Virus record (IMG/VR): IMGVR_UViG_3300020477_001008
Location: 178,647 to 242,646 of that record
Reading direction: 5' to 3' (one strand)
DNA: 64,000 bases
The notes under the pieces were generated by a model. It saw only the letters and a program-made list of their open reading frames with translations. It ran no database searches and was not told the DNA's origin. This document shows positions 1,413 through 57,957 of the stretch, piece by piece; the stretch's first letter is position 1, and each line of letters starts with the position of its first letter. Made by a program: the position numbers and the translations under genes.

Positions 1413-1618
1413 AAACCAGGAAAGAGAGAATAAAAAAAATTGACATCAACGATGAAATTAGTGTACAATTAAAAGAAGTAAAAAAAACTATTGATATGGA
1501 AGGCATTAATCAAAGAACTCAAAAAACACTGGCACTCAATCACGGAGCAAAAGGTGAGACAGTAATATCCAAGGCTGACAAAGAATGGTTAGATCAGAAA
1601 TCAGATAATAATAAATGA
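1400..1618 (+). other. A_AAA_AAG slippery heptamer (1400-1406) and 70-codon -1 frame extension ending at TGA overlapping the clpX ATG
   Basis: 0 frame GTT AAA AAA AAG ACT TAA. The -1 frame has a stop just before the A-run, then is open 1406-1615 (DLKTRKERIKKIDIND...DQKSDNNK) and ends in an ATGA overlap. Confidence 0.55.
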
Positions 1619-32116: not shown

Positions 32117-33152
32117 GAAAATATATCCAAAATGTTTGTTTACTACAAAAGCAAAAGCAACTTATATTAGTCACGATGGCTATGTAAGACCTTGTTGCTT
32201 TGTTCATAGGCATAATAAAACTGAAAGAGATGAACCGTGGATGGTTGATTTTAAACATAATATTGGTTCTGGTAAAAGTTTAGAAGAAATGTTTAGTACT
32301 CCTGAGTATACAGATTTTTTTAATAGGTTAAAGACTGGAAAAGATATACCTGAAAGATGTTATGAAGTCTGTGGAAAAGTTCAAACAAATGTTGGAACAG
32401 ATCATAGAAAAGAAAAAACAACAAATGAAGTACCAAGATGGACTAAAGCAGTTGAGCAGTCATATGAAGAAACATATAAAGTACAAAAGAAATTACAAGT
32501 AGATGTAACTCACAGATGCAGTTTAGGTTGTCCTAAATGTATGAGGTTTGAAGCAAATTGGACAGATCCAGTAACTAAAAAGAAATATGCCCTAGCTCAT
32601 CAAGTTTTAAAAAAAGTAGAATTACAAGTAGATGATTTTAAAAAGTTATTTAAAGAAAATCCGCAGATGTGTAAAGGTGATGTTGATTTTTGTGGTACTT
32701 GGAGTGATGCAATTTATCATCCTGAATTTTTAGAAATTTGTAGAGTAATTAAAAACAATGGTGCTAATATTAATATTGCAACAAATGGATCTCGTAAAAA
32801 ACCAGAATGGTGGGATGAATTATATAGTATGATGGATCCTGCTTGGGATTCAATTGTATTTGGAATGGACGGTTTAAAAGATACAGCAGACAAATATAGA
32901 AAATATATTATATACGATGATGTTATTACAGCAATGAAAAAAGGTGCTGATGCTGGATTTGTTAAAAATAAATGGTCCTTTATTGTTTTTAATTTTAATC
33001 AACATCAAGTTTATGAAGCAGAACAATTAGCAAAAGATATTGGAATAAAATTTGAAATAGTAAAATCACATAGATGGGATGGACCAAATGATCCATACAT
33101 ACCTACTAAAGAATGGTTACCACAATCAACAATCAAGGAGTACAATTTATAA
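32100..33152 (+). CDS. Radical SAM protein, class B core with the Cys module moved to the N-terminus
   Basis: PKC...RPCC...CYEVC precedes CSLGCPKC, ATNGS, FGMDGLKDTADKYR; start may be GTG 32109. Confidence 0.88.
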   Translation: MTKVNKKIYPKCLFTTKAKATYISHDGYVRPCCFVHRHNKTERDEPWMVDFKHNIGSGKSLEEMFSTPEYTDFFNRLKTGKDIPERCYEVCGKVQTNVGTDHRKEKTTNEVPRWTKAVEQSYEETYKVQKKLQVDVTHRCSLGCPKCMRFEANWTDPVTKKKYALAHQVLKKVELQVDDFKKLFKENPQMCKGDVDFCGTWSDAIYHPEFLEICRVIKNNGANINIATNGSRKKPEWWDELYSMMDPAWDSIVFGMDGLKDTADKYRKYIIYDDVITAMKKGADAGFVKNKWSFIVFNFNQHQVYEAEQLAKDIGIKFEIVKSHRWDGPNDPYIPTKEWLPQSTIKEYNL

Positions 33153-34363
33153 TGCATAGGGCAAATGAATTAAAAGAAGTACAACTTGAAATATCAAGTA
33201 ATTGTCAAGCAGGCTGTATGGAATGCAGTAGATGGAAAATGTTAGATGGAAAACAAATACCTAATCCAAATGTAAAATTTGGTGCCGCAGGTAATATGAG
33301 TATTGATTTAATTAAAGAAACGTTTGATAGAAAAATATTACCTGTGTTTGAATTTATAGCACTTGATGGTAATTATGGAGATAGTTTAATACATCCACAA
33401 AGTCTTGAAATTATAGAACACTTGCTTTTAACATTTGGAGATAGAAAAAATCCTGCACTTAAAACTAATGTTCCAGTACATATTGAAATAAATTCAAATG
33501 GTGGTTATCATAATAAAGATTATTGGTATGAATTAGGAAAGCTGTTTGCTAAACATAGAGAATTAAATGGAGATAGAGAAAGTTCAGTTTGTTTTGGAAT
33601 AGATGGAACTGATAATGAAACACACGACAAATATAGAAGAAATGTTGTATATGATAAAGTTATTGAACACGCAGAACAATTTATAAAAGGTGGTGGCAGA
33701 GCTGAATGGAAATATTTGGAGTTTGATCATAATGTACATCAAACAGATGAAGCTAGGAAGATAGCTAAAGAAATGGGATTTAAAAAATTTTTTGTAAAAA
33801 GATCTAGATGGGTTGATGCCGCATTACGTGAAATTGTAGAACAAAAGCAAACAGGCGACTCGTCAGGAACAACTATACAAGGTGCAAAATTAGGTAAAAA
33901 AGCTGGAGCGACATATAGCAGGATACCAAAAGCAAAAAAAGATTTTGTTAAAAAAGTAGAACAGCAAGTTAGCAAGTATAAAGATTATTTTAATGAAGTA
34001 CCAATAAGTTGTTATTGGAGGAATCAAAAAAGAATACAAATAGAGTATGATGGTGCTGTATGGCAATGTTGTCATTTTCCACCAGTTTATAGTGTTGATA
34101 TGAGACCAGATAATCAAAGAGGAAAATGGGAATTAGAAAAAGCTAAAGAATATGATTATTATCGTGCAACATATGGCAATGATTGGAATAATTTAAACAA
34201 GCATAATTTAGTTAATATATTAGAACACCCTTATTTTGATTCTATTGAGAGAAGTTGGAGCCATACAACTAAAGATAAAATAGAACCAAGATTGTCGCGA
34301 TGTGTTGAAAAATGTGCTATAACTACTAAAGCATTAACAAAAGATAAAAGGGAAAGATTATAA
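33152..34363 (+). CDS. Radical SAM protein, class B
   Basis: CQAGCMEC, GNYGD, NSNGG, FGIDGTDNETHDKYR; C...QCC...CVEKC; AAGGAG SD upstream of ATG 33152. Confidence 0.88.
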   Translation: MHRANELKEVQLEISSNCQAGCMECSRWKMLDGKQIPNPNVKFGAAGNMSIDLIKETFDRKILPVFEFIALDGNYGDSLIHPQSLEIIEHLLLTFGDRKNPALKTNVPVHIEINSNGGYHNKDYWYELGKLFAKHRELNGDRESSVCFGIDGTDNETHDKYRRNVVYDKVIEHAEQFIKGGGRAEWKYLEFDHNVHQTDEARKIAKEMGFKKFFVKRSRWVDAALREIVEQKQTGDSSGTTIQGAKLGKKAGATYSRIPKAKKDFVKKVEQQVSKYKDYFNEVPISCYWRNQKRIQIEYDGAVWQCCHFPPVYSVDMRPDNQRGKWELEKAKEYDYYRATYGNDWNNLNKHNLVNILEHPYFDSIERSWSHTTKDKIEPRLSRCVEKCAITTKALTKDKRERL

Positions 34364-35742
34364 TGTCAGCAAAAGATGTATATTGTCCAATACCGTGGAT
34401 GTTCCAAGCAGTCAGGAACAATGGTGATGTGAGAATATGCTGTCAAGCCAATGTTACTAAAAATCAAGGAGTAGTAAGAAAAGAAGATGGATCATCATAT
34501 AATGCTGGAAAAGATGATATGGATGAAGCCAGAAATGCTGAGCTAATGAAAATTGTTAGAAAAAATATGCTTGAAGGACGTTGGAGTCACGAATGTGGTA
34601 GATGTAAAAAAGAAGAAGAAGCTGGTTTACGAAGTAGAAGACAATATGAACAGGAATGGGGATTTAAATTAGAAGACGCAATACGAATTACTAATGAAGA
34701 TGGTACTATTAAAACTGATGATACACCTTTAGTATATTATGATTTACGTTTTGGTAACTTATGTAATTTAAAATGTAGAATGTGCGGACCAACAGATAGT
34801 CACAGTTGGTATGAAGACTGGCTTGCCTTACACGGAGGTGATGGGTTTCAAGATACTCACGGATATGTAAAATTAAACAAAAATAATAAAGGCAGATTGG
34901 AAACAAACGATTATGATTGGCACAGTAGTGAAAGTTTCTGGAATAATATAGAAAAAAATATTCCTAATATGCAACACGTTTATATGGCAGGTGGAGAACC
35001 TTTAATGATAGAAAGACATTATGACTTTTTACAAAAATGTGTTGATATGGGTCAAGCAGAAAAAATGATAATTGAATATAATACTAATATGACTAATTTG
35101 CAACCTCGTGTTTTAAAATTATGGGAAAAATTTAAAACAGTAAGAGTTGGAGCGTCGATCGATGGAATAGGTAAAGTATTAGAGTATCAAAGGTATCCAG
35201 CTAAATGGAAATCAGTTTTAAAAAATTTACAAGCAGTTGATAACCTAGGACCAAATGTTCAAGGTTGGTTAGCTTGTACAGTTACAACGGTAAATGTATT
35301 TCATATACCAGAATTTATAAAATGGAAAATTATGGAGAGTGGATTTAAAAAGTTTAATACTGGAAAAAAATTACCAGTGTTAACTATACACGTAGCACAC
35401 TCACCAGGCCACGCCTGTATTAAAACTCTACCTCCTGAGTTAAAACAAATAGTTAGAGAAAAGTATGATAATTTTAAAGATTGGCTAATCAATGCAGATT
35501 TAGATGAAAAATATGTACACGCATCTATGAAAATTATTAATAGTATAGTTGACTATATGATGAGTGGCGACAATGGTGGTAAAGGTTGGGGCTGGTTTAA
35601 AATGTATACAAGAACATTAGATTTACGTAGAAAACAAAATATATTAGATATAGCACCTGAGTATGAACCATATTTTAGAGATTTAGATCATATTGATCAG
35701 AACATAAGAGAGAGTGAAAATGCAAGAGTCGGACAAACCTAA
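34363..35742 (+). CDS. Radical SAM protein, class A
   Basis: CPIPW...ICC...CGRC; GNLCNLKCRMC; AGGEP; SIDG. Confidence 0.92.
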   Translation: MSAKDVYCPIPWMFQAVRNNGDVRICCQANVTKNQGVVRKEDGSSYNAGKDDMDEARNAELMKIVRKNMLEGRWSHECGRCKKEEEAGLRSRRQYEQEWGFKLEDAIRITNEDGTIKTDDTPLVYYDLRFGNLCNLKCRMCGPTDSHSWYEDWLALHGGDGFQDTHGYVKLNKNNKGRLETNDYDWHSSESFWNNIEKNIPNMQHVYMAGGEPLMIERHYDFLQKCVDMGQAEKMIIEYNTNMTNLQPRVLKLWEKFKTVRVGASIDGIGKVLEYQRYPAKWKSVLKNLQAVDNLGPNVQGWLACTVTTVNVFHIPEFIKWKIMESGFKKFNTGKKLPVLTIHVAHSPGHACIKTLPPELKQIVREKYDNFKDWLINADLDEKYVHASMKIINSIVDYMMSGDNGGKGWGWFKMYTRTLDLRRKQNILDIAPEYEPYFRDLDHIDQNIRESENARVGQT

Positions 35743-36973
35743 AACTTTTTGCGTTGCCCCATTTTCTCATATGTGGTATCGTAATTCTGGAAACTATTAT
35801 GTCTTTAAACCTTGTTGTGAGGTAAGAGATAATGATGTTTATTATATTGATAAAAATAAAAATCATAAAGATAATGTAATTGCTGAATATTGGAATAGTG
35901 AATGGATTAAAGATATTCGAAAAACTATGTTGGAAAATAAACCGCATAAGATTTGTACAGATTGTTATAAAGTTGAAAAAACAACTGGACGTAAGCACAG
36001 AGATGATTATGCTGGATATTTAAAAGATAATACTATAGAGTTTAATGTTGATACTGGAAATAAATGGAATACACCATTAACACTTGATTATAGACCAAGT
36101 AACTTATGTAATTTAAAATGTAGAATGTGTGGCCCTGGTAGTAGTACTGAGTGGGCTAAAGAAATTGAAAGATATAAAAATTCACATTATCAAAATTTAG
36201 ATAAAATGGAAGATGGCACAGAAGTTATAATGATGTCAACGGACAATGCATTTATGTTTGATAGGGAAACAAATGCAGATGACCAATATAAAAATTTACC
36301 TTTAGACAACATAAGAAGAGCCGCTTTCTTAGGTGGAGAACCTTTATTAAATGAAGAAGTTTTTAATATAATGTCTAATTGGATAAAATTAGGAAAAGAT
36401 AATATTAAGATACAAATAACTACAAATGGTACAAGTTTTACAGATAGATGGTTAAAGTTATTTTCTAAATTCAAAAGAATAAAACTTGTAATTAGTTTAG
36501 ATGGTGTAGGTAATACTTTTGATTATATTAGAACAAATGCAAACTGGGATAAAGTTTTAGAAAATTGTAAAAATTTATCTAAATTAGATCATATTACAAT
36601 ATGTTTTAGTTATTGTATACAGATGTATAATGTTTTTGGTTTAGTTGAGATACTTGAATTTTTAAAGACTTGGAAACAACCAAAAGATGATACTCATATT
36701 TTTGAAGTAGTATTCCAAAATTTTCTTTCAACATCAATGTTAGATACAGAAGATTATAATAAAGTTATTTCAGAGTTACAAGATTATAGAAATAAAAATT
36801 TAGATAGAACTATTGAAGTGGATGAAATATTAGGTATTCTAAAGTATGATAGGAATAGAGTTGTATCAGATGCAGAGAAAAAGTATTTTATAAGTTATAC
36901 AAATAAACTAGACGAAGCTAGGAAAACTAGCCTTATTGATTTAAATCAGGATTTTAAAAAATACTTGATTTAA
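35720..36973 (+). CDS. Radical SAM protein, class A
   Basis: CVAPF...PCC...CTDC; SNLCNLKCRMC; LGGEP; SLDG. Confidence 0.92.
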   Translation: MQESDKPKTFCVAPFSHMWYRNSGNYYVFKPCCEVRDNDVYYIDKNKNHKDNVIAEYWNSEWIKDIRKTMLENKPHKICTDCYKVEKTTGRKHRDDYAGYLKDNTIEFNVDTGNKWNTPLTLDYRPSNLCNLKCRMCGPGSSTEWAKEIERYKNSHYQNLDKMEDGTEVIMMSTDNAFMFDRETNADDQYKNLPLDNIRRAAFLGGEPLLNEEVFNIMSNWIKLGKDNIKIQITTNGTSFTDRWLKLFSKFKRIKLVISLDGVGNTFDYIRTNANWDKVLENCKNLSKLDHITICFSYCIQMYNVFGLVEILEFLKTWKQPKDDTHIFEVVFQNFLSTSMLDTEDYNKVISELQDYRNKNLDRTIEVDEILGILKYDRNRVVSDAEKKYFISYTNKLDEARKTSLIDLNQDFKKYLI

Positions 36974-48602: not shown

Positions 48603-48634
48603 CACAGAGCTAGGTACAGATAAATATTTGTGTT

Positions 48635-50209
48635 ATGAGAGCAACGCATTTAAATACGGCAGTTTTTGCATTTGGAAGGTTTAATCCACCTACAATTGGT
48701 CACGGTAGATTGGTAGAAGTTGTTAAAAAACAGCCAGGAACACCTTTCTTATTTTTAACTCATACGCAAAAACCAAAAACAGATCCATTAACATTTGAGC
48801 AAAAAGTAAAGTATGCTAAAGCTAGTTTTACTAATATTAAAATTGGTGATAGTTCTGTAAGAACATTAATACAAGCTTTACAAAAACTAGAGTCTTTAGG
48901 ATTCTTAAATGTAATAATGGTTGCTGGAGATGATAGACTACAACAGTTTACAGACTTTTTACCAAAGTACAATGGTAAAGATTATAGTTTTGAAAGTGTT
49001 AAAGTTGTTAGTGCTGGAGAAAGAGATCCAGATTCAGATGGTGCTATAGGTATGTCAGCAAGTAAAATGAAAGCTATGGCAGTTGCCGGTGACTTTAAAG
49101 GATTTCAAAAAGGAACTATTAATCCTGATATAGCAAAAAGTATGTATGATGATGTAAGAGCAGGTATGGGAATTACCGAAATTAAAGAAGCACAATATCC
49201 AATGCCAAAAGTTTATGTTGATATGGATGGTGTGTTAGCAGACTTCTTTACAGCTTTAGCAAAATTTAGAGGAGTTGACCATTGGAAAGATGGCGGCCAC
49301 GATAGTGTACAAGATTCAATTGAAGCAATTCAAGGAACAGATTTCTTTTCAACATTACCAGTATTCAATACCGCACCAAATATTATTAATAGTGTAAAAG
49401 CATTTACTGGTGGCGAATGGTATATTAATTCATCTCCATTAAGAGGAGATCACGAAAATTCTACAAAGCATAAATTAGATTGGCTTAAGAAGAATAATTT
49501 TGATCCAACAGATGTTGTTATAACAGGAAGAAAAGAATCGTATGCAATTAATAAACAAACAAATCAACCAAACATATTAATTGATGATAAGCCATCTAAT
49601 TTAGAAAGATGGACATCTAAAGGTGGTATTGGAATTAGATATCAAGCAACACAAGATAATCCAATGAGAGTACAAAAAGGTTTAGAAGTAATTAAAAATT
49701 ATTTAGAAAAAAATAATGGATTAATAGATCCTAAAGATGTTGCTGAATTAAATAAAGCAATTGATACAGGACAACTAATGGAGAATGGTGGAAAAATTAT
49801 TCCAGGTGTTAATACTACTCACGATGTTGGTCCTAATGAAATAAAAATACAAGCAAAGAAAATGGGATTTACAGTTAGTAAAGATGGAGTACCACCAATT
49901 ATGAAACCAAAAAATTTAAGAGAATATATTAAACTTATTGAAGAAAGAGATACAAGAGAATTGAAATTTCAAAATAGAGATGGAAAATATTCTATGTTGA
50001 GTTTACCAGGAACACAAAAATGGCAAAAAGATAAAAAGACTGCAGAACCAGGAACAGACAAATGGTTTAAAACTTGGAAAACATTACCATATTTAACTAA
50101 AGGTAGAAAGAATCATTATATGCTACCTATAAAAGAAAAGTTAAATGAGTTAGAAAATTTATTAAAAGAATACGGAGTTATTAAAAATGAAAATAAAAGA
50201 GATAGCTAA
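48635..50209 (+). CDS. Nucleotidyltransferase (cytidylyl/NMN adenylyltransferase-like) fused to HAD 5'-nucleotidase and extra modules
   Basis: FGRFNPPTIGH...SAGERDPD...MSASKMK, then VYVDMDGVLADF...ILIDD...GGIGI; ATAAATA-N8-ATG. Confidence 0.8.
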   Translation: MRATHLNTAVFAFGRFNPPTIGHGRLVEVVKKQPGTPFLFLTHTQKPKTDPLTFEQKVKYAKASFTNIKIGDSSVRTLIQALQKLESLGFLNVIMVAGDDRLQQFTDFLPKYNGKDYSFESVKVVSAGERDPDSDGAIGMSASKMKAMAVAGDFKGFQKGTINPDIAKSMYDDVRAGMGITEIKEAQYPMPKVYVDMDGVLADFFTALAKFRGVDHWKDGGHDSVQDSIEAIQGTDFFSTLPVFNTAPNIINSVKAFTGGEWYINSSPLRGDHENSTKHKLDWLKKNNFDPTDVVITGRKESYAINKQTNQPNILIDDKPSNLERWTSKGGIGIRYQATQDNPMRVQKGLEVIKNYLEKNNGLIDPKDVAELNKAIDTGQLMENGGKIIPGVNTTHDVGPNEIKIQAKKMGFTVSKDGVPPIMKPKNLREYIKLIEERDTRELKFQNRDGKYSMLSLPGTQKWQKDKKTAEPGTDKWFKTWKTLPYLTKGRKNHYMLPIKEKLNELENLLKEYGVIKNENKRDS

Positions 50210-50651
50210 AGATCCTTGTTGGAGCGGTTATAAACAAATTGGAATGAAAAAGAAAAATGGTAAACAAGTACCAAACTGTGTACCAAACGAATCAATTGAA
50301 GTTACATTAGATGATAATCAAGACTTTCACGAAGAATATGGATATCTAGGTTATAGTATTGATGAAAATGATTTATTTGAAGCTGAGTATCAAGGTAGAA
50401 CAGTTAAATTAAACAAACCAACACGTGGTGATGTTAAAAAGTTTAAAGTGTATGTCAAAGATCCAAAAACAGGAAACGTTAAAAAAGTTAATTTTGGACA
50501 CGGCGGTACAAGTGCTAAAAAAGCCGGACAGAAAACTATGAAAATTAAAAAGTCAAATCCTGAAAGAAGAAGATCTTTTAGAGCAAGACATAATTGTAAA
50601 AATCCAGGACCTAAAACAAAAGCAAGGTATTGGAGTTGTAAGGCTTGGTAA
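50187..50651 (+). CDS. Basic phage protein (DUF6321-like C-terminus), putative head protein
   Basis: MKIKEI N-terminus; KKVNFG...RRRSFRARHNC...KARYWSCKAW. Confidence 0.6.
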   Translation: MKIKEIAKDPCWSGYKQIGMKKKNGKQVPNCVPNESIEVTLDDNQDFHEEYGYLGYSIDENDLFEAEYQGRTVKLNKPTRGDVKKFKVYVKDPKTGNVKKVNFGHGGTSAKKAGQKTMKIKKSNPERRRSFRARHNCKNPGPKTKARYWSCKAW

Positions 50652-50652
50652 T

Positions 50653-50856
50653 ATGAGATTATACGAGATAGTTGAAGCTAGTTGGTATCAAGATGTAAGG
50701 TTACAGCCAAAGAGACTTACGACTAAAAAGCCTCGTAAACTTTTACCAAAACCTATAAGAAAAATAATTGTTAAAAGACCAAAAAGAATTAAAAGTCATA
50801 TGAAAACTGACTTTACTAGAAGAGCTGATAAATCATCTTGGTTAGCAGGAAAGTAA
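50653..50856 (+). CDS. Small basic protein with capsid-targeting-like N-terminus
   Basis: MRLYEIVE followed by a Lys/Arg-rich body. Confidence 0.6.
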   Translation: MRLYEIVEASWYQDVRLQPKRLTTKKPRKLLPKPIRKIIVKRPKRIKSHMKTDFTRRADKSSWLAGK

Positions 50857-50857
50857 A

Positions 50858-51556
50858 ATGAAACTTGCAGAATTTTTTTTAAAAGAAAACTTTGATTTAA
50901 CCGATTTGGTTTATTATGATGAAGTCCAACTTAAAAAGTCAGAGAAAAAAGTAGAAGAATATGAAGCACATCATTTAAAAGATGGTTGGCAAGATATTAA
51001 ATTAGAATCACCACCTGATAATAATAGTGATGAAACTAAAAATGAATTAGTTACTATTACTAACATACAAGAAAAAAGAACTGAAGAAGATGAAAATTCT
51101 ATTCACGTTTCTGATATGATGGACGCATTTCATTTTAGAGAATTTTTAAATGCAAAGAAAATAGATTATAGATCTAGCGAAATATCAGCTATTATTGATG
51201 ATGTATGGAAAGTAGTTAGAACATATAAAAATATGTATAATAGACCTAGGCCATATCAAATTGCTGAAGCATATAATATGGAGTTTGATACAATGTACGG
51301 TCAGAGTAACAAAACACCTGCTTATCCTAGTGGTCACAGTTGTGGTGCTAGAGTAGTTGCTGAATACCTATCAAAAAAATATCCTGAGCATAAAGAAAAA
51401 TTTTTAGAGATAGCTGAAAAAATTGGCATAGGAAGAATACAAGCTGGTTTTCATTATCCATCAGATCACGTAGCAGGAATAGATCTTGCATTAAAAGTTT
51501 TTCCTTATTTAGAAATATCAGAACAACATTTGGACGATTATAAAAATGAAAATTAA
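50858..51556 (+). CDS. PAP2-superfamily acid phosphatase
   Basis: KNMYNRPRP, PAYPSGH, GRIQAGFHYPSD; MKLAEFFLKE leader. Confidence 0.85.
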   Translation: MKLAEFFLKENFDLTDLVYYDEVQLKKSEKKVEEYEAHHLKDGWQDIKLESPPDNNSDETKNELVTITNIQEKRTEEDENSIHVSDMMDAFHFREFLNAKKIDYRSSEISAIIDDVWKVVRTYKNMYNRPRPYQIAEAYNMEFDTMYGQSNKTPAYPSGHSCGARVVAEYLSKKYPEHKEKFLEIAEKIGIGRIQAGFHYPSDHVAGIDLALKVFPYLEISEQHLDDYKNEN

Positions 51557-52016
51557 AGATATTACAAATGAATGGATTCCAATATATAGCACAATGAAAG
51601 CTTATGGTATGAAACGTGCTAAACATCCAGACGGTTCAAGATATTTTAAATTAGCTGAACAAGAAATTACAGATCAAGATTTACAGCAATTAGAAACGTA
51701 TGCTGATAGATTATTTGCATCATTAGGAATTGATGTTGCATTTTCAAAACATTTTAAAGACAGATTAAATGATCCAAGAAATAAAAAACCAATAACAATG
51801 GGAGAACTTACTAGGTTATTTAGACAGGTCTATAAACAACACGGTAAGCCAATTGCACAATTAGGTCCAGACGCAGAAGCAGTAATGAAAGATATGAAAA
51901 CTGATGTAAATGTTCCATTTGCTTTACAATGGGATGGCAACGAATTAGATTTAGTTGCAAAAACAGTTATGCGTAAACAAAACTTTGCAACGCCTAATCC
52001 TGAATTTAGAATTTAA
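51546..52016 (+). CDS. Hypothetical phage protein with capsid-targeting-like leader
   Basis: MKIKDITNE leader; FSKHFKDRLNDPRN...KTVMRK core. Confidence 0.65.
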   Translation: MKIKDITNEWIPIYSTMKAYGMKRAKHPDGSRYFKLAEQEITDQDLQQLETYADRLFASLGIDVAFSKHFKDRLNDPRNKKPITMGELTRLFRQVYKQHGKPIAQLGPDAEAVMKDMKTDVNVPFALQWDGNELDLVAKTVMRKQNFATPNPEFRI

Positions 52017-52026
52017 GAGAGTTTTT

Positions 52027-52230
52027 ATGAAATGGGCGTTGGTGATTTTATATTTTGTAGTGGGACCTGAAGGTGGTTGGTATGAAAGTGAACGTAAATT
52101 TTTTAAAACAGAAACAGAATGTAAAGAGCATATGGAGTTCTTTAATTCTATGCCAAAGCCAGGAACAATGACATCAAGATGTATTACTAGTACAGATGAA
52201 GGTTGGTGGAATAAAAAGGATAGTATATAA
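52027..52230 (+). CDS. Small secreted/membrane protein
   Basis: MKWALVILYFV, F.TETEC...C; start at ATG 52027. Confidence 0.55.
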   Translation: MKWALVILYFVVGPEGGWYESERKFFKTETECKEHMEFFNSMPKPGTMTSRCITSTDEGWWNKKDSI

Positions 52231-52556
52231 TGGAATTATTACTTAAAGCAATTATTGGTGGTATAGTAATTGCAACAGTTAGTACAGTTGGACAACGTTA
52301 TCCCACTATAGGAGCCTTTGTGTTAGGTGTACCATTAGCAACATTTGTGTCATTTATTTTTATGCATTATGCTGGAGTAGATGTACAAACATTTAAAACT
52401 ATTAGTATACAAACTGTATACTTTGTGTTAATTAGTTTATTATTCTTTCCTGTATTTGTTTTTATGTTACCGCAATATGGATTTTTAATGTCAATGCTTT
52501 CTGGAGTTGTAATTTCAGGTTCATTGATGCTATTATTATTAAAGTATGTCAGCTAA
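52230..52556 (+). CDS. Four-TM membrane protein (DUF3147-like)
   Basis: KAIIGGIVIATVS...YPTIGAFVLGVPL. Confidence 0.55.
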   Translation: MELLLKAIIGGIVIATVSTVGQRYPTIGAFVLGVPLATFVSFIFMHYAGVDVQTFKTISIQTVYFVLISLLFFPVFVFMLPQYGFLMSMLSGVVISGSLMLLLLKYVS

Positions 52557-52761
52557 TTTTGATAAAACACATAATCAGTTTTGTAAAGTTTACGTGGCTA
52601 ATGAGAAAAAGACTGATACATTTCATTGGGGATACTTTACTAAACGTATGGTTGATAAAGAGTTTAAAGAATTAGTTAAGTCAGACGAATGGGATGTTAT
52701 AGTAGTTGATGATATTACTAAAGAAGAATTTGATAAAATAATGGAACCATATACAGGATGA
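52546..52761 (+). CDS. Hypothetical protein
   Basis: Coupled ORF. Confidence 0.55.
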   Translation: MSANFDKTHNQFCKVYVANEKKTDTFHWGYFTKRMVDKEFKELVKSDEWDVIVVDDITKEEFDKIMEPYTG

Positions 52762-52988
52762 TTGATTGGGATAGACATAAAAGACCACAGTATGAACCAC
52801 CAAGTTGGATTGAGTGGCAACCAACTAATCCTATGAAATATTTGTTTATGCTTTGTCTTGTTCTTTGGATACTTCCAGTTTTATTTGGATTAATTTTAAC
52901 ACCCTTAGGTGCAATAGTTAATATTTTATTTGTTGATTGGGTTATGTATAAAAGAGATACTTCTTTTTTAAACCGTGATCGTGATTAA
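52758..52988 (+). CDS. Small membrane protein
   Basis: Two hydrophobic segments. Confidence 0.55.
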   Translation: MIDWDRHKRPQYEPPSWIEWQPTNPMKYLFMLCLVLWILPVLFGLILTPLGAIVNILFVDWVMYKRDTSFLNRDRD

Positions 52989-52996
52989 ATATTATT

Positions 52997-53542
52997 ATGC
53001 ACAAAGAATATTTTTTTCATATACCTAAACTAGATTTAAATGATGAACAAAGGTCTATATTACATAAAAAATATCTAGTTTCTAAAATTACACATAAAGG
53101 TTATAATAAAAATACGCATCAATATCTTAAAACATTTCATACTGAAATTGATGTTTTAAAAGACATTTATTCAAGTAAAATAATTAAGCAAATAGAAGAT
53201 TTATGTGAAGGATTACCTATAGATAAATTTAATAGACACACGTCATACGAATTTTTAAAAACAGAAGGTAAAGTTGAAATACATAGAGATCCTGTACGTT
53301 TAGCAGTTTTAGTTATTCCTTTGTTTAGTAAAGAAAACAATAAATTAGAATTTTGGAATGAAGAAGAAACAAAAATTGTTAATGAATTAGATTATGGTAC
53401 TAAAACCTATATAATGAGAACTCGTGTGCCTCATAGTGTATCAACTAGTAAAAAACCAAGGGTTTTTTGGCAGGGAAGTATTTTTACAAGAGATTTTGAT
53501 GAAGTGTTAAAAGATTATCGTCAAGGACGACTTTTTAAATAA
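52997..53542 (+). CDS. Cupin / 2OG-Fe(II) oxygenase-like protein
   Basis: IHRDPVR...PHSV...PRV; TTAAATA-N5-ATG. Confidence 0.5.
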   Translation: MHKEYFFHIPKLDLNDEQRSILHKKYLVSKITHKGYNKNTHQYLKTFHTEIDVLKDIYSSKIIKQIEDLCEGLPIDKFNRHTSYEFLKTEGKVEIHRDPVRLAVLVIPLFSKENNKLEFWNEEETKIVNELDYGTKTYIMRTRVPHSVSTSKKPRVFWQGSIFTRDFDEVLKDYRQGRLFK

Positions 53543-53550
53543 ATATTGTT

Positions 53551-53754
53551 ATGATAGAATGGATAAAAAAATTGTTCGCATCGCAGACTTACGAACTAAT
53601 TATAGAGCATTTAGGAACAGTAAAAAATTATACAGTTACTAAGGTTTATACATTAAATGATCGTACTGCTCATTTTAAAGCAATAGATGGCGAAAAATAT
53701 ACATTAAGAAGTGCTGATAAAATGAGTTGGTCTTTAAGAAAGATTACAAAATGA
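53551..53754 (+). CDS. Hypothetical protein
   Basis: ATAAATA-N5-ATG. Confidence 0.6.
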   Translation: MIEWIKKLFASQTYELIIEHLGTVKNYTVTKVYTLNDRTAHFKAIDGEKYTLRSADKMSWSLRKITK

Positions 53755-53951
53755 GTAAATTTAGAGTAATTGAAAAATCAAATAAAACGTTTATTCTTAA
53801 ACAAGAGAACGTAATTGAAGCTATTGCTAACTTTCTTGCTGATGCTGGTATGCTAGAAGAAGACGAAACTGAAGGTAAAATGACTTATAAAATGAACAAA
53901 GATGCTTCAATAACAGTTGAATTGCACTTTGCAAAAACCACTGTAAACTAA
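53751..53951 (+). CDS. Hypothetical protein
   Basis: ATGA-coupled to upstream ORF. Confidence 0.55.
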   Translation: MSKFRVIEKSNKTFILKQENVIEAIANFLADAGMLEEDETEGKMTYKMNKDASITVELHFAKTTVN

Positions 53952-53974
53952 AATAAACACTAAATACAGCTATT

Positions 53975-54475
53975 ATGCGTTATTCGGAAATAATTAATGA
54001 GTCAATGAGCTTTTCAGCAGGACATTCTGAGAAAAGAGAAGACGGAAACTACTGGATAAGCGACACAGATTCAGGTGATAGATATGCTCCAGAATTTTAT
54101 AAGAATATGGACAAGTATTCTAAAGATCTTGATTTAGAGCCACCTGAAAACCCAGATTATAAAGAAGAATTAGATTTATCATTATCAAACGCAAGTATGC
54201 GTGAAGTATTTCACGAATTAGGATATCCTACAGATTTAGAGGACAGAGCACCTTTTCCAATAGATGAATTTATTGGTAGAACTACACAATGGTTACAAAA
54301 AGCAATTGGCAAGCCATCTCCAGAGCAAAAACCAGAAATAGTTAAACAACCATATGGGGCTACAATGATTAGTGGTGGCAAACCAGAAGGATATTTTAAT
54401 AGAGTTATCAAAAGAATGAATGAGATTGCTAGAGCTGGGAAACAAAATGGTGCAACTCACGTGTGGGCAAGTTAG
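53975..54475 (+). CDS. Hypothetical protein with capsid-targeting-like leader
   Basis: MRYSEIINE; CTAAATA-N8-ATG. Confidence 0.65.
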   Translation: MRYSEIINESMSFSAGHSEKREDGNYWISDTDSGDRYAPEFYKNMDKYSKDLDLEPPENPDYKEELDLSLSNASMREVFHELGYPTDLEDRAPFPIDEFIGRTTQWLQKAIGKPSPEQKPEIVKQPYGATMISGGKPEGYFNRVIKRMNEIARAGKQNGATHVWAS

Positions 54476-54487
54476 GTAAATATTACT

Positions 54488-56500
54488 ATGAGACTTACAA
54501 AACTTTTTGAAGCATTAGATAAACAAGCTAAAAAGCCAAATCCAATGGCTAAAGCATTATCAGATCCTAAATTTAAGCCAAAAACAGAAACAGATAAAAA
54601 GAAAGAAGCTAAAAAAGGTTATCAAAAGCATAAAGGTAAGATAGATGAAGCAGGCTACGAAGGACAAGTAGAGCCAACACACCACGATTTTAAAAATGTA
54701 AATTTAGATTCAATTAAAAAAATTATAGCTGATAGAGATTTATCAGCAGATGCTGAAGAAGTAGATGGTGCTATTAGAGTACACACATATGATACTGATA
54801 GAAAATCAGTAGCAAAATCATTAGGAATCAATGAAGAACTTTATATTAATGGTATGAAAGATGTTGAAGATGTTATTAATATGATTAAAGACACACTTGA
54901 TGATGGTCAAATTGATAGTGCTAAAGATTATTTAGAACAGTTTAAAGAATATCTACACTCAAAAGGAATTACAGATTCAGTTGATCCTATTAGACACGAT
55001 CAAGATGCTAAAGAAGAACTTGCAAAAGAAATTTATGCTAACAATGAATATTACCAAAGTGAGTATGAAGATTGGGAAGCATTTATGAATTCAGATGATT
55101 TTGAAGAAGAAAATATGAGACTATGGAGTAAGTTTGGTGAATCAAAAATTAAACCATATGTGTCTATGTATAATGATAAAGACACAGGTAAGATGACGTA
55201 TGACGTATTAGATAGCGATGGAAAATCAGCATTTAAAACTAAAGACAAGAAAGCGGCTATGGGTTTCTTTAATAAAAACTTTGATGCTTTAAGAAAAGGT
55301 TTTGATTCATTAAAAGATGAAAATGTTTCAGCTATAGCTAAAGCAATAAATTCAGCTTATGATCCAACTTTTGGAGATACTGATAATAGATTTATGAAAA
55401 CTGTAAAAAAATTAAATCCTTTTAAAAGTGATGAATATAAAAAATTGCAAATGGCAAAACAAGCTGAAAGAGATAATCCAAATTGGAAAGGTGAGCCTGG
55501 CGACCAAGCTGGTGAAACTTTACCAAATGGAAGAAGAGCATATTACAGAAATGTAAATGGACAGAAGCAAAGAGTAGATATTTACAAAGACATATATCCA
55601 AGTGAAGCAGTTGCAGAATTTGATGGTCCAGATGAAACTAAAGATAATGCAGACTTTACAGATAAAGAAATTAAAATGGCGTTTGGTGTTTTAAATGATC
55701 CAAGATTTAAAGGTGGTAATTACAGTGGTGCTGTTAATGTTATTAATAAAATTGCACCAGGTTTAGCAGATCACCCATCAGTAGCAAATGCTTTAAAAAG
55801 AACAAATGAAAATTTAACTGAAGATCAAATGACAGATGAAGTTAAAGCAATATTAGACAAACACGGTATTAAAAGTACAGACGATATTGAATATGGTGGA
55901 GAAGCTTTTAGTGATTTATTTGATTATTTCTCAAGTGATCCTGATGAAATGCCATATGGTGTTCAAAAAGCAAGAACAGGAATGCCAGATGAATGGATTG
56001 CAAATAGAATTTTAGATTTAGGTTTACTTAAAGAAGTAGAGCCACAAATGAATCCAGAACCTAATAGACCACAACCTACTACTCCACAAAGAGGACCAGA
56101 TGATACAAGATTAAAAACAAATGTTTCTTTACAACAAATTGCTAACTTATTTCCTGGAATAGAAGATAAGCAAACATTTTTACAATCATTGTTAAGATTA
56201 AAGCAAGGGCAAAAAATTTCAATGCAACACGCATATACTTTAGCTAATGCATTTAAAGAATTAATTTCAAAAGATCCACAAGACACACAAAGAGCAATGA
56301 TACAATTAAAAAAAATCGGAGCTCAAGAGTCAATAAACGAAACTAAAGAAGATGATGCACCTGGTTATCCACACCAATATAAAACTATGAATCAAGGTAA
56401 GACGCCAGAAGAAGCATTACAAGATGAAAGAATTGAAGATAGTAAAGAATTAGAACGAATTCAAATGTTAGCAGGGTTATTTCATAGCGAGAAGGAATAA
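54488..56500 (+). CDS. Large modular putative head-internal polyprotein
   Basis: MRLTKLFE leader; unrelated short modules separated by (I/L/V)xE sites; ends ELERIQMLAGL. Confidence 0.65.
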   Translation: MRLTKLFEALDKQAKKPNPMAKALSDPKFKPKTETDKKKEAKKGYQKHKGKIDEAGYEGQVEPTHHDFKNVNLDSIKKIIADRDLSADAEEVDGAIRVHTYDTDRKSVAKSLGINEELYINGMKDVEDVINMIKDTLDDGQIDSAKDYLEQFKEYLHSKGITDSVDPIRHDQDAKEELAKEIYANNEYYQSEYEDWEAFMNSDDFEEENMRLWSKFGESKIKPYVSMYNDKDTGKMTYDVLDSDGKSAFKTKDKKAAMGFFNKNFDALRKGFDSLKDENVSAIAKAINSAYDPTFGDTDNRFMKTVKKLNPFKSDEYKKLQMAKQAERDNPNWKGEPGDQAGETLPNGRRAYYRNVNGQKQRVDIYKDIYPSEAVAEFDGPDETKDNADFTDKEIKMAFGVLNDPRFKGGNYSGAVNVINKIAPGLADHPSVANALKRTNENLTEDQMTDEVKAILDKHGIKSTDDIEYGGEAFSDLFDYFSSDPDEMPYGVQKARTGMPDEWIANRILDLGLLKEVEPQMNPEPNRPQPTTPQRGPDDTRLKTNVSLQQIANLFPGIEDKQTFLQSLLRLKQGQKISMQHAYTLANAFKELISKDPQDTQRAMIQLKKIGAQESINETKEDDAPGYPHQYKTMNQGKTPEEALQDERIEDSKELERIQMLAGLFHSEKE

Positions 56501-56503
56501 GCT

Positions 56504-57142
56504 ATGGACCTTGAATATCTAAAAAAATTAGCAGGGATAGGTGAGCAGAATCAAATGAAAAGTTTGGCTCAAGAAATGGCCGAACGTAGAAGAGACATTA
56601 TGAAAAATGTAATGAAAGAACAAAAAGAAGAACAATTGGAATTACAAGCACTTCCTTACAAAATTACAGATTTAGCACCAGTACTATCAAAAGAAAATGT
56701 TGATTATCATTATGATATATTAAGTAGAGGATACGTAAACAGATATAATAATAATGAAGGCGATTCAGACTTTAATTATGGTGGTGCAAAACTACACAAT
56801 TTATGGTGGCAACAATTTAAACCAGCAAAAGAAACATCAAATTACAGCGGTCCTATAAAGCAAACTATAGATGCTAATTATGGTGATTTAAAAGGTTTAG
56901 AAGAAAAATTAGTTGAAGCCGCAATGACTATACAAGGATCAGGATGGGTTTATCTAACTAAAACTGGAACAATTAAAACAACACCAAATCAAAGTTACAA
57001 ACCAGATGTGTTTATGCCTATAGATATGTGGGAACACAGCTTCACGGACTATGTACCAGCCAAAGACGCAAAGGTTAAATACATTAAAGCAGTTCTTAAA
57101 TTAATAGATTGGAATGCGATTAATAGAAGGTTAGAAGGATGA
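56504..57142 (+). CDS. sod: Fe/Mn superoxide dismutase with N-terminal extension
   Basis: LPY...YHY, LHNLWW, QGSGW, PNQ, DMWEH: all four metal ligands present; Gly-Gly and NQ suggest Mn-type. Confidence 0.9.
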   Translation: MDLEYLKKLAGIGEQNQMKSLAQEMAERRRDIMKNVMKEQKEEQLELQALPYKITDLAPVLSKENVDYHYDILSRGYVNRYNNNEGDSDFNYGGAKLHNLWWQQFKPAKETSNYSGPIKQTIDANYGDLKGLEEKLVEAAMTIQGSGWVYLTKTGTIKTTPNQSYKPDVFMPIDMWEHSFTDYVPAKDAKVKYIKAVLKLIDWNAINRRLEG

Positions 57143-57957
57143 ATTTAAAAGATTTTACTAAAGAAGATATTACACCTGCAGATTTAAAAAGGCTAGGTGC
57201 TTCTGAGCCTCAAATTTATATGCACAAAGATGGCAAAACAATAATGGTGCCTAAATCTAAAGAACAAGAATATGCAAAACAAGGTTATCAAAAGTCTTCA
57301 TTAAGAGCTGAAACAAAAGTAAATGAAAGAATGCCTGCGTCAGTTATCAAGCATAAAGAAAGATTAGCACATATGACGGATCAAGAACTTGCTGATAGAC
57401 ACGGTGATACTGATGAAGAAAGATTAAGACAAATGGCTTGGAGACACGGCTATGGTAAAATGAGTTCACATTATGTTGACAGAATTCGTAGAGCTAAAGA
57501 AAAAGTTGAAGGCTTACAAGAAGACTATGCAAAAATGACAAAAGATTTAATTATTAAATTAGTTAAAAAAGGTAAAACAGATGATGAAATTCAACAAGCA
57601 ACAGGGGAAACTGGTTTGCGAATTAGACTTATTAGAAAAAGTGTCGACTACGATAAAAAAGAAGAAGCAATTAAAATAGCAGAAGAAAACGCAAGAAGAG
57701 ATTTTATGAAAAAAGCGGCCGCTGGAATGGGTGCAGTAGCATTGGGAACAATGGCACCATCAGTAGCTTGGCCAGATGAACCACCTGAAAATTTTGATTT
57801 TATGGATCAGTTCTTTAGTGATAAAATTTTAAATGATCCAAAATATAAAGAGTTTAAATTAAAAGGAAATGATTTTTTAAATATGATGAAAGATTTAGAA
57901 AAGAAATGGGAAAAAGATAAACAAAAAAATAAAGATGATGGTTCAGTAGAGGTATAA
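57139..57957 (+). CDS. Modular putative head protein with internal twin-arginine signal
   Basis: MNLKDFTKE leader; ARRDFMKKAAAGMGAVALGTMAPSVA at 57691-57768. Confidence 0.65.
   Translation: MNLKDFTKEDITPADLKRLGASEPQIYMHKDGKTIMVPKSKEQEYAKQGYQKSSLRAETKVNERMPASVIKHKERLAHMTDQELADRHGDTDEERLRQMAWRHGYGKMSSHYVDRIRRAKEKVEGLQEDYAKMTKDLIIKLVKKGKTDDEIQQATGETGLRIRLIRKSVDYDKKEEAIKIAEENARRDFMKKAAAGMGAVALGTMAPSVAWPDEPPENFDFMDQFFSDKILNDPKYKEFKLKGNDFLNMMKDLEKKWEKDKQKNKDDGSVEV

What the first reader, a model, noticed from the sequence alone, without database searches (positions are those of the whole stretch)
54488..56500. 670-aa mosaic that looks like a Glu-delimited polyprotein
Seen: compositionally unrelated segments separated by KIDE|AG, GINE|EL, FGE|SK, VAE|FD, LTE|DQ, LKE|VE and INE|TK. 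57139 shows the same pattern (VNE|RM, LQE|DY, IAEE|NA). Inference: prohead-protease processing releases several small effectors from one ORF, and modules are shuffled between genes.
Basis: inference. Interest (0 to 1): 0.6.

Follow-up and report, generated by a model that had tools for sequence, protein, structure and literature searches.

The report
Glu-delimited modular phage cargo polyprotein
A 670-residue protein of an uncultured marine T4-like jumbo phage is a string of small independent domains, each ending in the cut-site motif of the phage's own head-maturation protease; the same domains occur in other orders, in other genes or alone in related phages, which suggests (but does not prove) a capsid-packaged polyprotein cut into a cocktail of small proteins.

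Summary
The number of such sites is no more than chance; their placement is far from chance. Six of the seven (E54, E116, E218, E377, E445, E516) fall on homology breakpoints, where relatives switch to a different module; E618 does not. Across 68 non-redundant relatives, 42% of [LI]xE sites lie on breakpoints, against 5% of all positions and 1% of hydrophobic-x-Asp sites. Modules are permuted, split over neighbouring genes in a complete 328-kb relative, or stand alone as 71-90-aa ORFs. AlphaFold gives beads on a string (pTM 0.24).

The genome encodes a T4-type prohead protease (Peptidase_S77). Its capsid protein has five hydrophobic-x-Glu sites in the 43-aa propeptide and none in the mature 349 aa. 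The protein starts with a leader like the T4 capsid-targeting sequence and ends with a motif otherwise found at the scaffold protein's C-terminus. It lies downstream of a late-type promoter.

Best reading (about 0.6): a prohead-loaded cargo polyprotein cut at L/I-x-Glu junctions. Module shuffling is shown. Cleavage, packaging and any effector role are inferred. This is a new variant of known kinds: T4 internal proteins, processed jumbo-phage ejection proteins and polyvalent proteins.

The parts
54488..56500 (+). Gene for the 670-aa modular protein P0001 (stop codon 56498-56500)
   Evidence: five collinear homologs at 76-99% identity and about 185 partial ones
54488..54511 (+). aa 1-8: N-terminal leader MRLTKLFE|, resembling the T4 capsid-targeting sequence (CTS) and ending in L-F-E
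   Evidence: 52 of 68 family representatives start with MKLxxLFE or M[KR]-hydrophobic-x-E-hydrophobic. The T4 IPII/IPIII leader is MKTYQEFIAE|A.
54512..54649 (+). aa 9-54: basic module (pI 9.9) containing DUF7230, ending KIDE|
   Evidence: Pfam PF23876, 27.7 bits against a cut-off of 27. It is followed by at least 8 different modules in relatives. It sits mid-protein between two enzyme domains in the G002 relative.
54650..54835 (+). aa 55-116: small alpha/beta domain ending GINE|
   Evidence: pLDDT 79-91. The end motif G-[IV]-x-E is kept in many contexts.
54836..55141 (+). aa 117-218: acidic helical module ending FGE|
   Evidence: part of it (aa 159-220) lies in a different gene of G002
55142..55321 (+). 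aa 219-278: the 'IKPYVSMY' module
   Evidence: It is found after at least 8 different upstream modules, always right after a Glu. Relatives P0011 and P0014-P0017 jump from aa 277 straight to later modules.
55322..55618 (+). aa 279-377: low-confidence segment ending VAE|
   Evidence: pLDDT below 50 for most of it; absent from P0011 and P0014-P0017
55619..55822 (+). aa 378-445: module starting FDGPDET and ending RTNE / NLTE|
   Evidence: It forms the C-terminus of a separate 169-aa gene in G002. In the cultured Methylophilales phage Melnitz gene 21 it is flanked by ELDE| and SLAE|.
55823..56035 (+). aa 446-516: four-helix domain 'M6' with an invariant PYG..KAR.G.P motif, ending GLLKE|
   Evidence: Folds alone at pLDDT 87.9, pTM 0.73. 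There are 229 short homologs, many of them 71-90-aa stand-alone ORFs. An ESM Atlas viral cluster of 76-aa proteins aligns to exactly aa 446-516.
56036..56341 (+). aa 517-618: Pro-rich linker plus helical module
   Evidence: E618 is not a homology breakpoint
56342..56497 (+). aa 619-670: C-terminal module
56450..56479 (+). aa 655-664: LERIQMLAGL, the motif also found at the extreme C-terminus of the scaffold protein
   Evidence: The extended motif hits only 4 of 283 G000 ORFs, against 0.07 in shuffles. The four are the scaffold C-terminus, the C-terminus of a virion structural protein, the P0001 C-terminus and the N-terminus of the SOD-like protein.
53539..53545 (+). ATAAATA, a T4/cyanophage late-promoter-like motif 12 nt upstream of ORF 53551; no +-strand terminator-like site was found between it and the tRNA genes at 58751
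   Evidence: There are 28 copies on the + strand of G000, and 18 lie within 40 nt upstream of an ORF start, including one 12 nt before the portal gene.
53518..53535 (+). Hairpin plus T-run (terminator-like) just upstream of the late-type promoter
56504..57142 (+). Fe/Mn superoxide-dismutase-like protein with a 45-aa N-terminal extension starting MDLEYLKKLAGIGE|
   Evidence: Pfam Sod_Fe_C 5.7e-17 and Sod_Fe_N 5.8e-10; motif
57139..57957 (+). 272-aa protein P0002, built from at least 4 modules of the same pool
   Evidence: Modules at aa 1-60, 57-120 and 128-181 recur in dozens of family proteins. The C-terminal module (aa 183-272) is a stand-alone 98-aa gene in G002, preceded there by the leader MRILEIISE|.
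50187..50651 (+). 154-aa ORF starting MKIKEI...; aa 35-154 form the C-terminal module of P0107 and P0093
50858..51556 (+). PAP2-family phosphatase with the CTS-like start MKLAEFFLKE|
53975..54475 (+). 166-aa ORF starting MRYSEIINE|S, the closest match to the T4 CTS; aa 70-153 form a module of P0079/P0080
58225..58725 (+). 166-aa ORF sharing two modules with family proteins

Best explanation
P0001 is a cargo polyprotein of the phage head.

Proposed mechanism:
1. It is made late in infection.
2. It is recruited into the assembling prohead by an N-terminal leader like the T4 capsid-targeting sequence (MRLTKLFE|), by a C-terminal peptide that mimics the scaffold protein's C-terminus (..IQMLAGL..), or by both.
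3. The phage's T4-type prohead protease (Peptidase_S77, which cuts after Glu in L/I-x-E) then cuts it at the junctions between modules.
4. This releases about 8-9 small proteins of 5-12 kDa, alternately basic and acidic. They stay with the DNA and presumably enter the host cell with it.

Because each module carries its own C-terminal cut site, modules can be added, dropped, permuted or moved between genes without loss of function. This would explain the extreme mosaicism.

Shown: the module boundaries, the shuffling, the junction motif and its statistics, the autonomous folding of one module, the protease gene, the motif shared with the scaffold protein, and the late-type promoter motif.

Inferred: late expression, packaging, cleavage, ejection, and any activity of the modules.
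For: 1. Breakpoints fall on Glu.
- In 68 non-redundant relatives, 42% of [LI]xE sites lie within 2 aa of a homology breakpoint. The figure is 5% for all positions, 1% for hydrophobic-x-Asp and 3% for hydrophobic-x-Lys.
- Of 259 breakpoints found without reference to any motif, 51% have hydrophobic-x-Glu within 2 aa (random 7%) and 79% have a Glu (random 34%).
- At junctions P3 is L 45% / I 31%, and P1' is D, A, S or G in 77%.

2. At least 10 unrelated module types all end this way, and each is followed by varying modules.

3. [LI]xE is depleted in the family (321 observed, 384 in shuffles, z = -3.5). [LI]xD, [LI]xK and [LI]xN are enriched about 1.5-fold. In all ORFs of the genome [LI]xE is enriched 1.2-fold.

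4. The genome encodes Peptidase_S77 (90.9 bits; PHROG 'head maturation protease', 6.6e-58) and a gp23-like capsid protein.
- The 43-aa capsid propeptide holds 5 hydrophobic-x-Glu sites and ends LAE|A.
- The mature 349 aa hold none (shuffle mean 5.0, P = 0.002).
- T4 gp21 cuts after L/I-X-E (PMC9026906).

5. Leader.
- 52 of 68 family proteins start with a leader like the T4 capsid-targeting sequence (CTS).
- Five such ORFs cluster at window 50187-56500.
- Another CTS-like ORF of the genome matches a 'virion structural protein' PHROG.
- The G002 stand-alone gene reads MRILEIISE|NDRRDF, in register with the internal junction KIAEE|NARRDF of P0002.

6. The scaffold-like motif occurs in only four ORFs of the genome. 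Two of them are independently head or virion proteins. It is conserved at the scaffold C-terminus in three related phages.

7. The M6 domain ends in hydrophobic-x-Glu in 32 of 35 distinct internal copies, but in only 5 of 69 terminal or stand-alone copies.

8. All 7 records that encode S77 carry fused or flanked modules. The two near-complete records without S77 carry a 72-aa stand-alone M6.

9. AlphaFold gives pTM 0.24, with low-confidence linkers directly after E54, E116, E218, E377, E516 and E618.

10. A late-type promoter motif lies about 950 nt upstream, with no terminator-like site in between.
Against: - There is no direct evidence of cleavage, packaging or ejection.
- The M6 internal-versus-stand-alone contrast rests on few independent events: 8 context changes on the tree, only 2 on supported branches. 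The independent-pairs test has no power.
- Stand-alone M6 genes sit among tiny early-type ORFs near a DNA ligase, in phages that lack S77. The domain therefore also works without packaging.
- In G002 the DUF7230 module is fused to nucleotidyltransferase and 5'-nucleotidase domains, which one would expect to act in the cytoplasm. The orthologous enzyme fusion in this window (48635-50209) lacks the leader.
- Some boundaries have imperfect motifs: SKFE, RANE, LKDE.
- The leader regular expression was written after seeing the data.
- The late promoter is inferred from a motif only.
- The complex prediction of the C-terminal module with the capsid protein gave no verdict.
Confidence: 0.6

Rival explanations
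1. An ordinary uncleaved multidomain protein. The modules are small domains joined by linkers. The hydrophobic-x-Glu at domain ends is a helix-capping or linker preference, or a trace of how recombination joins cassettes. The protein acts intact in the cytoplasm.
For: - Cleavage is not shown.
- M6 homologs act as free-standing small proteins in phages without the protease.
- Enzyme domains (nucleotidyltransferase, 5'-nucleotidase) are fused into the same architecture in G002.
- The number of sites in P0001 is not above chance.
Against: - The motif is specific to Glu. Hydrophobic-x-Asp sites coincide with breakpoints less often than random positions do (1% against 5%).
- The motif is depleted inside modules.
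- It is largely absent from stand-alone copies of the same domain.
- It matches the propeptide pattern of the phage's own capsid protein.
- No conserved DNA motif exists at junctions beyond the GAA codon.
- This reading does not explain the scaffold-like C-terminal motif or the CTS-like leader.
Confidence: 0.2
2. A sacrificial prohead core or scaffold accessory protein. It is loaded into the prohead and cut at the same sites, but the fragments are simply expelled or degraded, as with T4 gp22, gp67 and gp68. There are then no delivered effectors.
For: - It shares its C-terminal motif with the scaffold protein.
- There are many cut sites.
- T4 core proteins are cut into small fragments that leave the head (PMC5694885, PMC9026906).
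Against: - Modules are well-conserved folded domains, up to 85-90% identical across different contexts.
- They have stand-alone homologs in other phages.
- They avoid internal cut sites. This is the pattern of products meant to survive, like the mature capsid protein, and not of scaffold, which is full of sites.
- Extreme turnover of module content is odd for an assembly factor.
Confidence: 0.12
3. A polyprotein processed outside the head by a different Glu-specific protease, from the phage or the host.
For: The junction evidence itself does not name the protease. The window encodes an AAA+/Lon-like protein at 1615-2907.
Against: - No Glu-specific endopeptidase other than S77 was seen.
- The P3 preference for L/I equals the published T4 gp21 motif (PMC9026906).
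- The capsid protein of the same genome shows the same motif logic.
- Fused forms co-occur with S77.
Confidence: 0.06

Closest known systems
T4 internal proteins IPI/IPII/IPIII and Alt, loaded through a capsid-targeting sequence (CTS)
   Same: - A short N-terminal leader ending in L/I-x-E. T4 has MKTYQEFIAE|A; here MRLTKLFE|A, and the neighbouring ORF has MRYSEIINE|S.
- The phage encodes a gp21-type S77 protease.
- The genes lie away from the head cluster, next to tRNA genes.
- Content is hypervariable between relatives while the leader is conserved (PMC3012670, PMC9026906).
   Different: - T4 internal proteins are single small proteins with one cut site. Here 8-9 modules are strung in one ORF, with a cut-site motif after each.
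- There is a second, scaffold-like motif at the C-terminus.
- There is no sequence similarity to IPI-III.
- Packaging is not shown here.
Processed inner-body and ejection proteins of phiKZ, 201phi2-1 and SPN3US
   Same: Many head-internal proteins of jumbo phages are cut after Glu at several sites by a gp21-related protease, and the products are delivered with the DNA (PMC5694885, PMC9026906).
   Different: - Those phages use an S80-type protease with an S/A/G-x-E or A-x-E motif.
- They remove long propeptides from one mature product.
- Here the protease is S77, P3 is L/I (76%), and every piece looks like a product.
Polyvalent proteins of phages and conjugative elements (Iyer et al. 2017, PMC5512222)
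   Same: Many unrelated domains sit in one polypeptide, with extreme architectural mosaicism. They are proposed to be delivered with the DNA and released by proteolysis, and that paper makes an explicit analogy to viral polyproteins.
   Different: - Polyvalent proteins are defined by known conflict domains and often an embedded peptidase.
- Here no module matches those domains.
- The proposed protease acts in trans (the prohead protease).
- The junctions carry a recognisable motif.
Polyproteins of RNA viruses; nematode polyprotein allergens (PMC3079579)
   Same: One ORF with defined short cut sites between units that become separate proteins.
   Different: Analogy only. The biology, the protease and the compartment (inside a capsid) all differ.
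Encapsulin cargo-loading peptides (from my own knowledge, not tested here)
   Same: A short terminal peptide shared by different cargo proteins that docks them inside an HK97-fold shell. Here the ..K-L-A-G-L.. motif is shared by the scaffold protein, a virion protein, P0001 and the SOD-like protein.
   Different: Binding of the motif to the shell is not shown, and the complex prediction gave no verdict.

Membership tests
T4-type CTS-loaded internal head proteins | N-terminal leader of about 8-20 aa ending in L/I-x-E | tested here: met
   MRLTKLFE|A in P0001. 52 of 68 family representatives have such a start, and 47 have hydrophobic-x-Glu ending at residue 5 or 8. T4 leaders were read from NC_000866.
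T4-type CTS-loaded internal head proteins | Phage encodes a gp21-type (Peptidase_S77) prohead protease | tested here: met
   G000 113028-113663: Pfam PF03420, 90.9 bits against a cut-off of 27; phrog_207, 6.6e-58
T4-type CTS-loaded internal head proteins | Protein is present in the head, cleaved by the protease and ejected | not testable with these tools
   This needs virion proteomics or N-terminomics. The indirect support is listed in the For line.
T4-type CTS-loaded internal head proteins | Sequence homology to IPI, IPII or IPIII | tested here: not met
   No PHROG or Pfam internal-protein family was hit. A tblastn search of 50,697 phage genomes found only Melnitz.
Polyvalent proteins (Iyer et al. 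2017) | Two to 15 unrelated domains in one phage polypeptide, with mosaic architectures | tested here: met
   At least 8 modules, permuted in relatives
Polyvalent proteins (Iyer et al. 2017) | Hallmark conflict domains and/or an embedded peptidase domain | tested here: not met
   Pfam finds only DUF7230 in P0001, and nothing else (apart from one OCRE match below its cut-off) in 10 large relatives
phiKZ-like processed inner-body proteins | S80-type protease and an S/A/G-x-E cleavage motif | tested here: not met
   The protease is S77. [AGS]xE sites coincide with breakpoints at 8%, against 42% for [LI]xE.
Pfam DUF7230 (PF23876) | Match at or above the gathering score | tested here: met
   aa 17-51, 27.7 bits against a cut-off of 27, so just over it. 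The family has no known function and no paper mentions it.
gp22-type scaffold protein | Homology along the length of the scaffold family | tested here: not met
   P0001 does not hit phrog_10922, the family of the G000 scaffold. Only the 10-aa C-terminal motif is shared.

The most novel reading that the evidence does not exclude
Marine T4-like jumbo phages have a general capsid cargo system. A short scaffold-derived peptide (..hydrophobic-x-x-hydrophobic-K-x-L-A-G-L..) and a CTS-like leader dock arbitrary proteins into the prohead. These include polyproteins assembled from small accessory proteins that other phages encode as separate early genes, and enzymes such as a superoxide dismutase and a PAP2 phosphatase. 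The prohead protease then cuts at L/I-x-E junctions, so a ready-made and rapidly reshufflable cocktail of proteins enters the host with the DNA, before any phage gene is expressed.
Probability: 0.35. Interest if true: 0.8.

Novelty: new variant of a known kind. Interest (0 to 1): 0.66.

Why it matters
If the cleavage model holds, three things follow.
- Hundreds of 'hypothetical' mosaic proteins of abundant marine phages could be read from sequence as defined sets of small mature proteins.
- It would explain how T4-like phages shuffle delivered proteins quickly, because each module carries its own cut site.
- It would identify two portable targeting signals for loading proteins into large capsids.

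It would also predict that small early proteins of some phages are pre-made virion cargo in others, which bears on how phages time host takeover and counter-defence.

A cultured relative exists: Methylophilales phage Melnitz, whose gene 21 carries a module flanked by ELDE| and SLAE|. The idea is therefore directly testable.

Tried and rejected
- Fold searches gave nothing. The whole model against PDB by Foldseek had a best E-value of 0.33. The M6 model had a best Z of 4.6 against 48,161 chains, and in BFVD matched only uncharacterised multi-module phage proteins. The modules' functions stay unknown.
- Pfam on 10 large relatives found only DUF7230 and one OCRE match below its cut-off.
- No paralog of P0001 exists in the 242.6 kb of the genome that is held.
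- A phylogenetically corrected test of 'internal copies carry the cut site' had no power: 8 context changes, 2 of them supported. The Fisher P of 4e-18 is therefore inflated by relatedness.
- The exact T4 late promoter TATAAATA is not near the gene. The relaxed ATAAATA form is the one this genome places upstream of genes.
- Junction DNA shows no shared motif apart from GAA, so a recombination-signal explanation was dropped.
- The complex prediction of the C-terminal module (aa 619-670) with the capsid protein gave no verdict and counts neither way.
- Literature searches found no description of this family or of DUF7230.
- The large representative-protein search was not run, because the claim does not rest on absence of relatives. 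Read laying was not used. No alternative genetic code was used.
Full report
**What the window is**

The window is the last 64 kb of a 242.6-kb IMG/VR virus record (G000). CheckV estimates it as 55% complete. It has about 31% G+C, nearly all genes lie on the + strand, and it carries seven tRNA genes.

Elsewhere the record encodes a T4-type head module:
- portal;
- a Peptidase_S77 prohead protease at G000 113028-113663 (Pfam 90.9 bits; PHROG 'head maturation protease', 6.6e-58);
- a scaffold protein;
- a gp23-like capsid protein.

A complete 328-kb relative with terminal repeats (G002) and the cultured Methylophilales phage Melnitz also encode S77. The sequence recurs in marine metagenomes from at least 14 studies, and metatranscriptome contigs hold up to 45% of its sampled words.

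**Checking the observation**

ORF 54488-56500 (+) gives a 670-aa protein, P0001. The segments between them alternate between basic and acidic.

The protein holds 11 hydrophobic-x-Glu sites against 12 expected from shuffles, and 6 [LI]xE against 6. The mere presence of such sites is therefore chance-level. The question is where they lie.

**Mosaicism is real**

The word search returned 190 relatives. Five are collinear (76-99% identity). The rest share only pieces, often at 80-90% identity over 8-12% of the query.

BLASTP segment ends cluster at aa 54/55, 116/118, 216-221, 268-277, 373-377, 441-445 and 514-519. E618 is not a breakpoint.

Module order is permuted in other proteins. In P0034, for example, query aa 215-269 sits before query aa 46-441.

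In the complete relative G002, the modules of P0001 are spread over three adjacent genes:
- a 1020-aa protein, in which DUF7230 lies between a cytidylyltransferase-like domain and a 5'-nucleotidase domain;
- a 169-aa protein that ends with the aa 378-445 module;
- an 824-aa protein that carries the aa 159-220 and aa 440-517 modules.

Neighbouring ORFs of the window (50187, 53975, 57139, 58225) share modules with the same protein pool.

**The junction motif**

Wherever a module ends and a different one follows, the last residues are hydrophobic-x-Glu. Examples are G-I-N-E, K-V-E-E, G-L-L-K-E, G-L-W-E and M-N-E.

In 68 non-redundant relatives, the share of sites lying within 2 aa of a well-supported breakpoint is:

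| Site class | Share on a breakpoint |
|---|---|
| [LI]xE | 42% |
| all positions | 5% |
| hydrophobic-x-Asp | 1% |
| hydrophobic-x-Lys | 3% |
| [AGS]xE | 8% |

I also started from 259 breakpoints defined without any motif. Of these, 51% have hydrophobic-x-Glu within 2 aa (random 7%) and 79% have a Glu (random 34%). P3 is L or I in 76%, and P1' is D, A, S or G in 77%.

[LI]xE is depleted in the family (ratio 0.84, z = -3.5). [LI]xD, [LI]xK and [LI]xN are enriched about 1.5-fold, and in the genome at large [LI]xE is enriched 1.2-fold. The junction DNA shares nothing except the GAA codon.

**Calibration within the same genome**

The capsid protein has five hydrophobic-x-Glu sites in its first 43 residues, the last reading LAE|A. 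It has none in the remaining 349 residues (shuffle mean 5.0, P = 0.002). The scaffold protein is full of such sites.

This is the pattern expected if the resident protease has the published T4 gp21 specificity, L/I-X-E (PMC9026906).

**Modules are autonomous domains**

AlphaFold2 of the whole protein gives pTM 0.24. Confident blocks lie at aa 61-115, 172-212, 390-512 and 546-608. Low-confidence linkers start right after E54, E116, E218, E377, E516 and E618.

The aa 446-516 module (M6) folds alone as a four-helix domain (pLDDT 87.9, pTM 0.73). It has 229 short homologs, many of them 71-90-aa stand-alone ORFs. An ESM Atlas cluster of 76-aa viral proteins aligns to exactly aa 446-516.

Internal copies of M6 end in hydrophobic-x-Glu in 32 of 35 distinct variants. 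Terminal or stand-alone copies do so in 5 of 69, ending instead in G-F-D-K-E or G-I-D-K-E. This contrast rests on few independent events, because the tree shows only 8 context changes. I treat it as suggestive only.

All seven records that encode S77 (G000, G002, G010, G016, G019, G023 and Melnitz) carry fused or site-flanked modules. The two near-complete records without S77 (63.6 kb and 48 kb) carry a 72-aa stand-alone M6.

**Signals that point to the prohead**

*N-terminal leader.* 52 of 68 relatives start with MKLxxLFE or M-[KR]-hydrophobic-x-E-hydrophobic.
- In G000 this kind of start marks a handful of ORFs, five of them clustered at window 50187-56500.
- One reads MRYSEIINE|S, which aligns with the T4 IPII/IPIII capsid-targeting sequence (CTS) MKTYQEFIAE|A.
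- Another CTS-like ORF of the genome (MKTFTQYLSE|A) matches a 'virion structural protein' PHROG.
- A 98-aa stand-alone gene of G002 starts MRILEIISE|NDRRDF. This is in register with the internal junction KIAEE|NARRDF of ORF 57139, so an internal junction and a leader are interchangeable.

*C-terminal motif.* P0001 ends ..LERIQMLAGLFHSEKE.
- The scaffold proteins of G000, G002 and G016 end ..IKRLAGLRS..LKKLAGLGVK and ..LKKLAGLQN.
- The extended motif hits only four of 283 ORFs of G000, against 0.07 in shuffles.
- The four are the scaffold C-terminus, the C-terminus of a 677-aa 'virion structural protein' next to the large terminase, the P0001 C-terminus, and the N-terminus of the SOD-like protein encoded directly downstream.
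- In about 30 relatives the motif is internal and is followed 6-9 residues later by Glu and the next module.

*Late-type promoter.* The motif ATAAATA occurs 28 times on the + strand, and 18 copies lie within 40 nt upstream of an ORF start, including one 12 nt before the portal gene. One lies at window 53539, 12 nt before ORF 53551. It follows a hairpin with a T-run, and no +-strand terminator-like site lies between it and the tRNA genes.

**Interpretation**

The most economical reading is a prohead-loaded cargo polyprotein cut by the S77 protease at its junctions (confidence about 0.6).

Three rivals remain:
- an uncleaved multidomain protein (0.2);
- a sacrificial core protein whose fragments are discarded (0.12);
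- processing by another protease (0.06).

Points against the favoured reading:
- There is no direct evidence of cleavage or packaging.
- M6 also exists in phages without the protease, among early-type small ORFs.
- Nucleotide-metabolism enzyme domains are fused into the same architecture in G002.
- Several boundaries have imperfect motifs.

**Comparison with what is known**

- T4 internal proteins share the leader logic and the hypervariability (PMC3012670, PMC9026906), but they are single proteins.
- phiKZ and SPN3US ejection proteins are cut at several Glu sites, but by an S80 protease with small P3 residues, and mainly to remove propeptides (PMC5694885).
- 'Polyvalent proteins' (PMC5512222) share the concept of many domains delivered together, but they are defined by other domains and by embedded peptidases.

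I found no description of this family, or of DUF7230, in the searchable literature. I therefore class it as a new variant of a known kind.

**Limits**

- Functions of the modules are unknown.
- The complex prediction gave no verdict.
- The large representative search and read mapping were not used.

Noticed in passing
window 21273-36973: A tandem run of about 12 ORFs of 306-575 aa. Seven of the ten scanned match Pfam Radical_SAM, five of them above the gathering score, and an eighth (30389-32116) matches a radical-SAM PHROG. An array of radical-SAM paralogs this size is unusual for a phage.
   Followed up: partly
window 56504-57142: An Fe/Mn superoxide-dismutase-like protein (Sod_Fe_N plus Sod_Fe_C). 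It has a 45-aa N-terminal extension that begins with the scaffold-like motif (..LKKLAGIGE|). Its start codon lies 3 nt after the stop of P0001, so it may be capsid cargo.
   Followed up: partly
G000 113674-114765; G000 138933-140966 (outside the window; L003, L108): The scaffold protein and a 677-aa 'virion structural protein' both end in the same ..hydrophobic-K-x-L-A-G-hydrophobic.. peptide. T4 gp22 ends in a similar ..DIVSVYAKVASRF. This may be a shell- or core-docking peptide.
   Followed up: partly
window 48635-50209 and L007 6050-9112: A cytidylyltransferase-like plus 5'-nucleotidase (NT5C) fusion protein sits behind a late-type ATAAATA motif at 48620. In the complete relative G002 the same fusion also carries a CTS-like start and an inserted DUF7230 module.
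   Followed up: partly
window 50858-51556: A PAP2-family phosphatase with the CTS-like N-terminus MKLAEFFLKE|.
   Followed up: no
window 57139-57957 (aa 183-210) and relatives: An Ala/Gly-rich hydrophobic stretch that Pfam scores weakly as a TAT-signal-like segment, placed in the middle of the protein right after a junction. Similar A-x-P-A-V-x-G-x-V-A modules recur after junctions in relatives. They may be membrane-active pieces.
   Followed up: no
window 50187-50651 (aa 5-39): A Cys-containing segment (..DPCWSGY...VPNCVP..) matches internal parts of five different PHROG families. It is another widely shuffled mini-module.
   Followed up: no
whole G000 record: TATAAATA is strongly depleted: 2 in the window against 16 expected. 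ATAAATA occurs 28 times on the + strand, mostly 12-16 nt before start codons. This is consistent with T4/cyanophage-type late promoters.
   Followed up: partly
window 1615-2907 and 11600-13492: An AAA+/Lon-like protein (PHROG hits to ATP-dependent protease and clamp-loader families). Also a 630-aa protein of a PHROG of unknown function that contains an Hsp70-like ..[14 protein letters not shown].. stretch.
   Followed up: no
L020 6352-6612 and L078 1489-1707: Stand-alone M6 genes lie in arrays of tiny ORFs next to a DNA ligase, and in a complete 63.6-kb phage without an S77 protease. The domain is therefore a widespread small marine-phage protein of unknown function, with an invariant PYG..KAR.G.P core.
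   Followed up: partly
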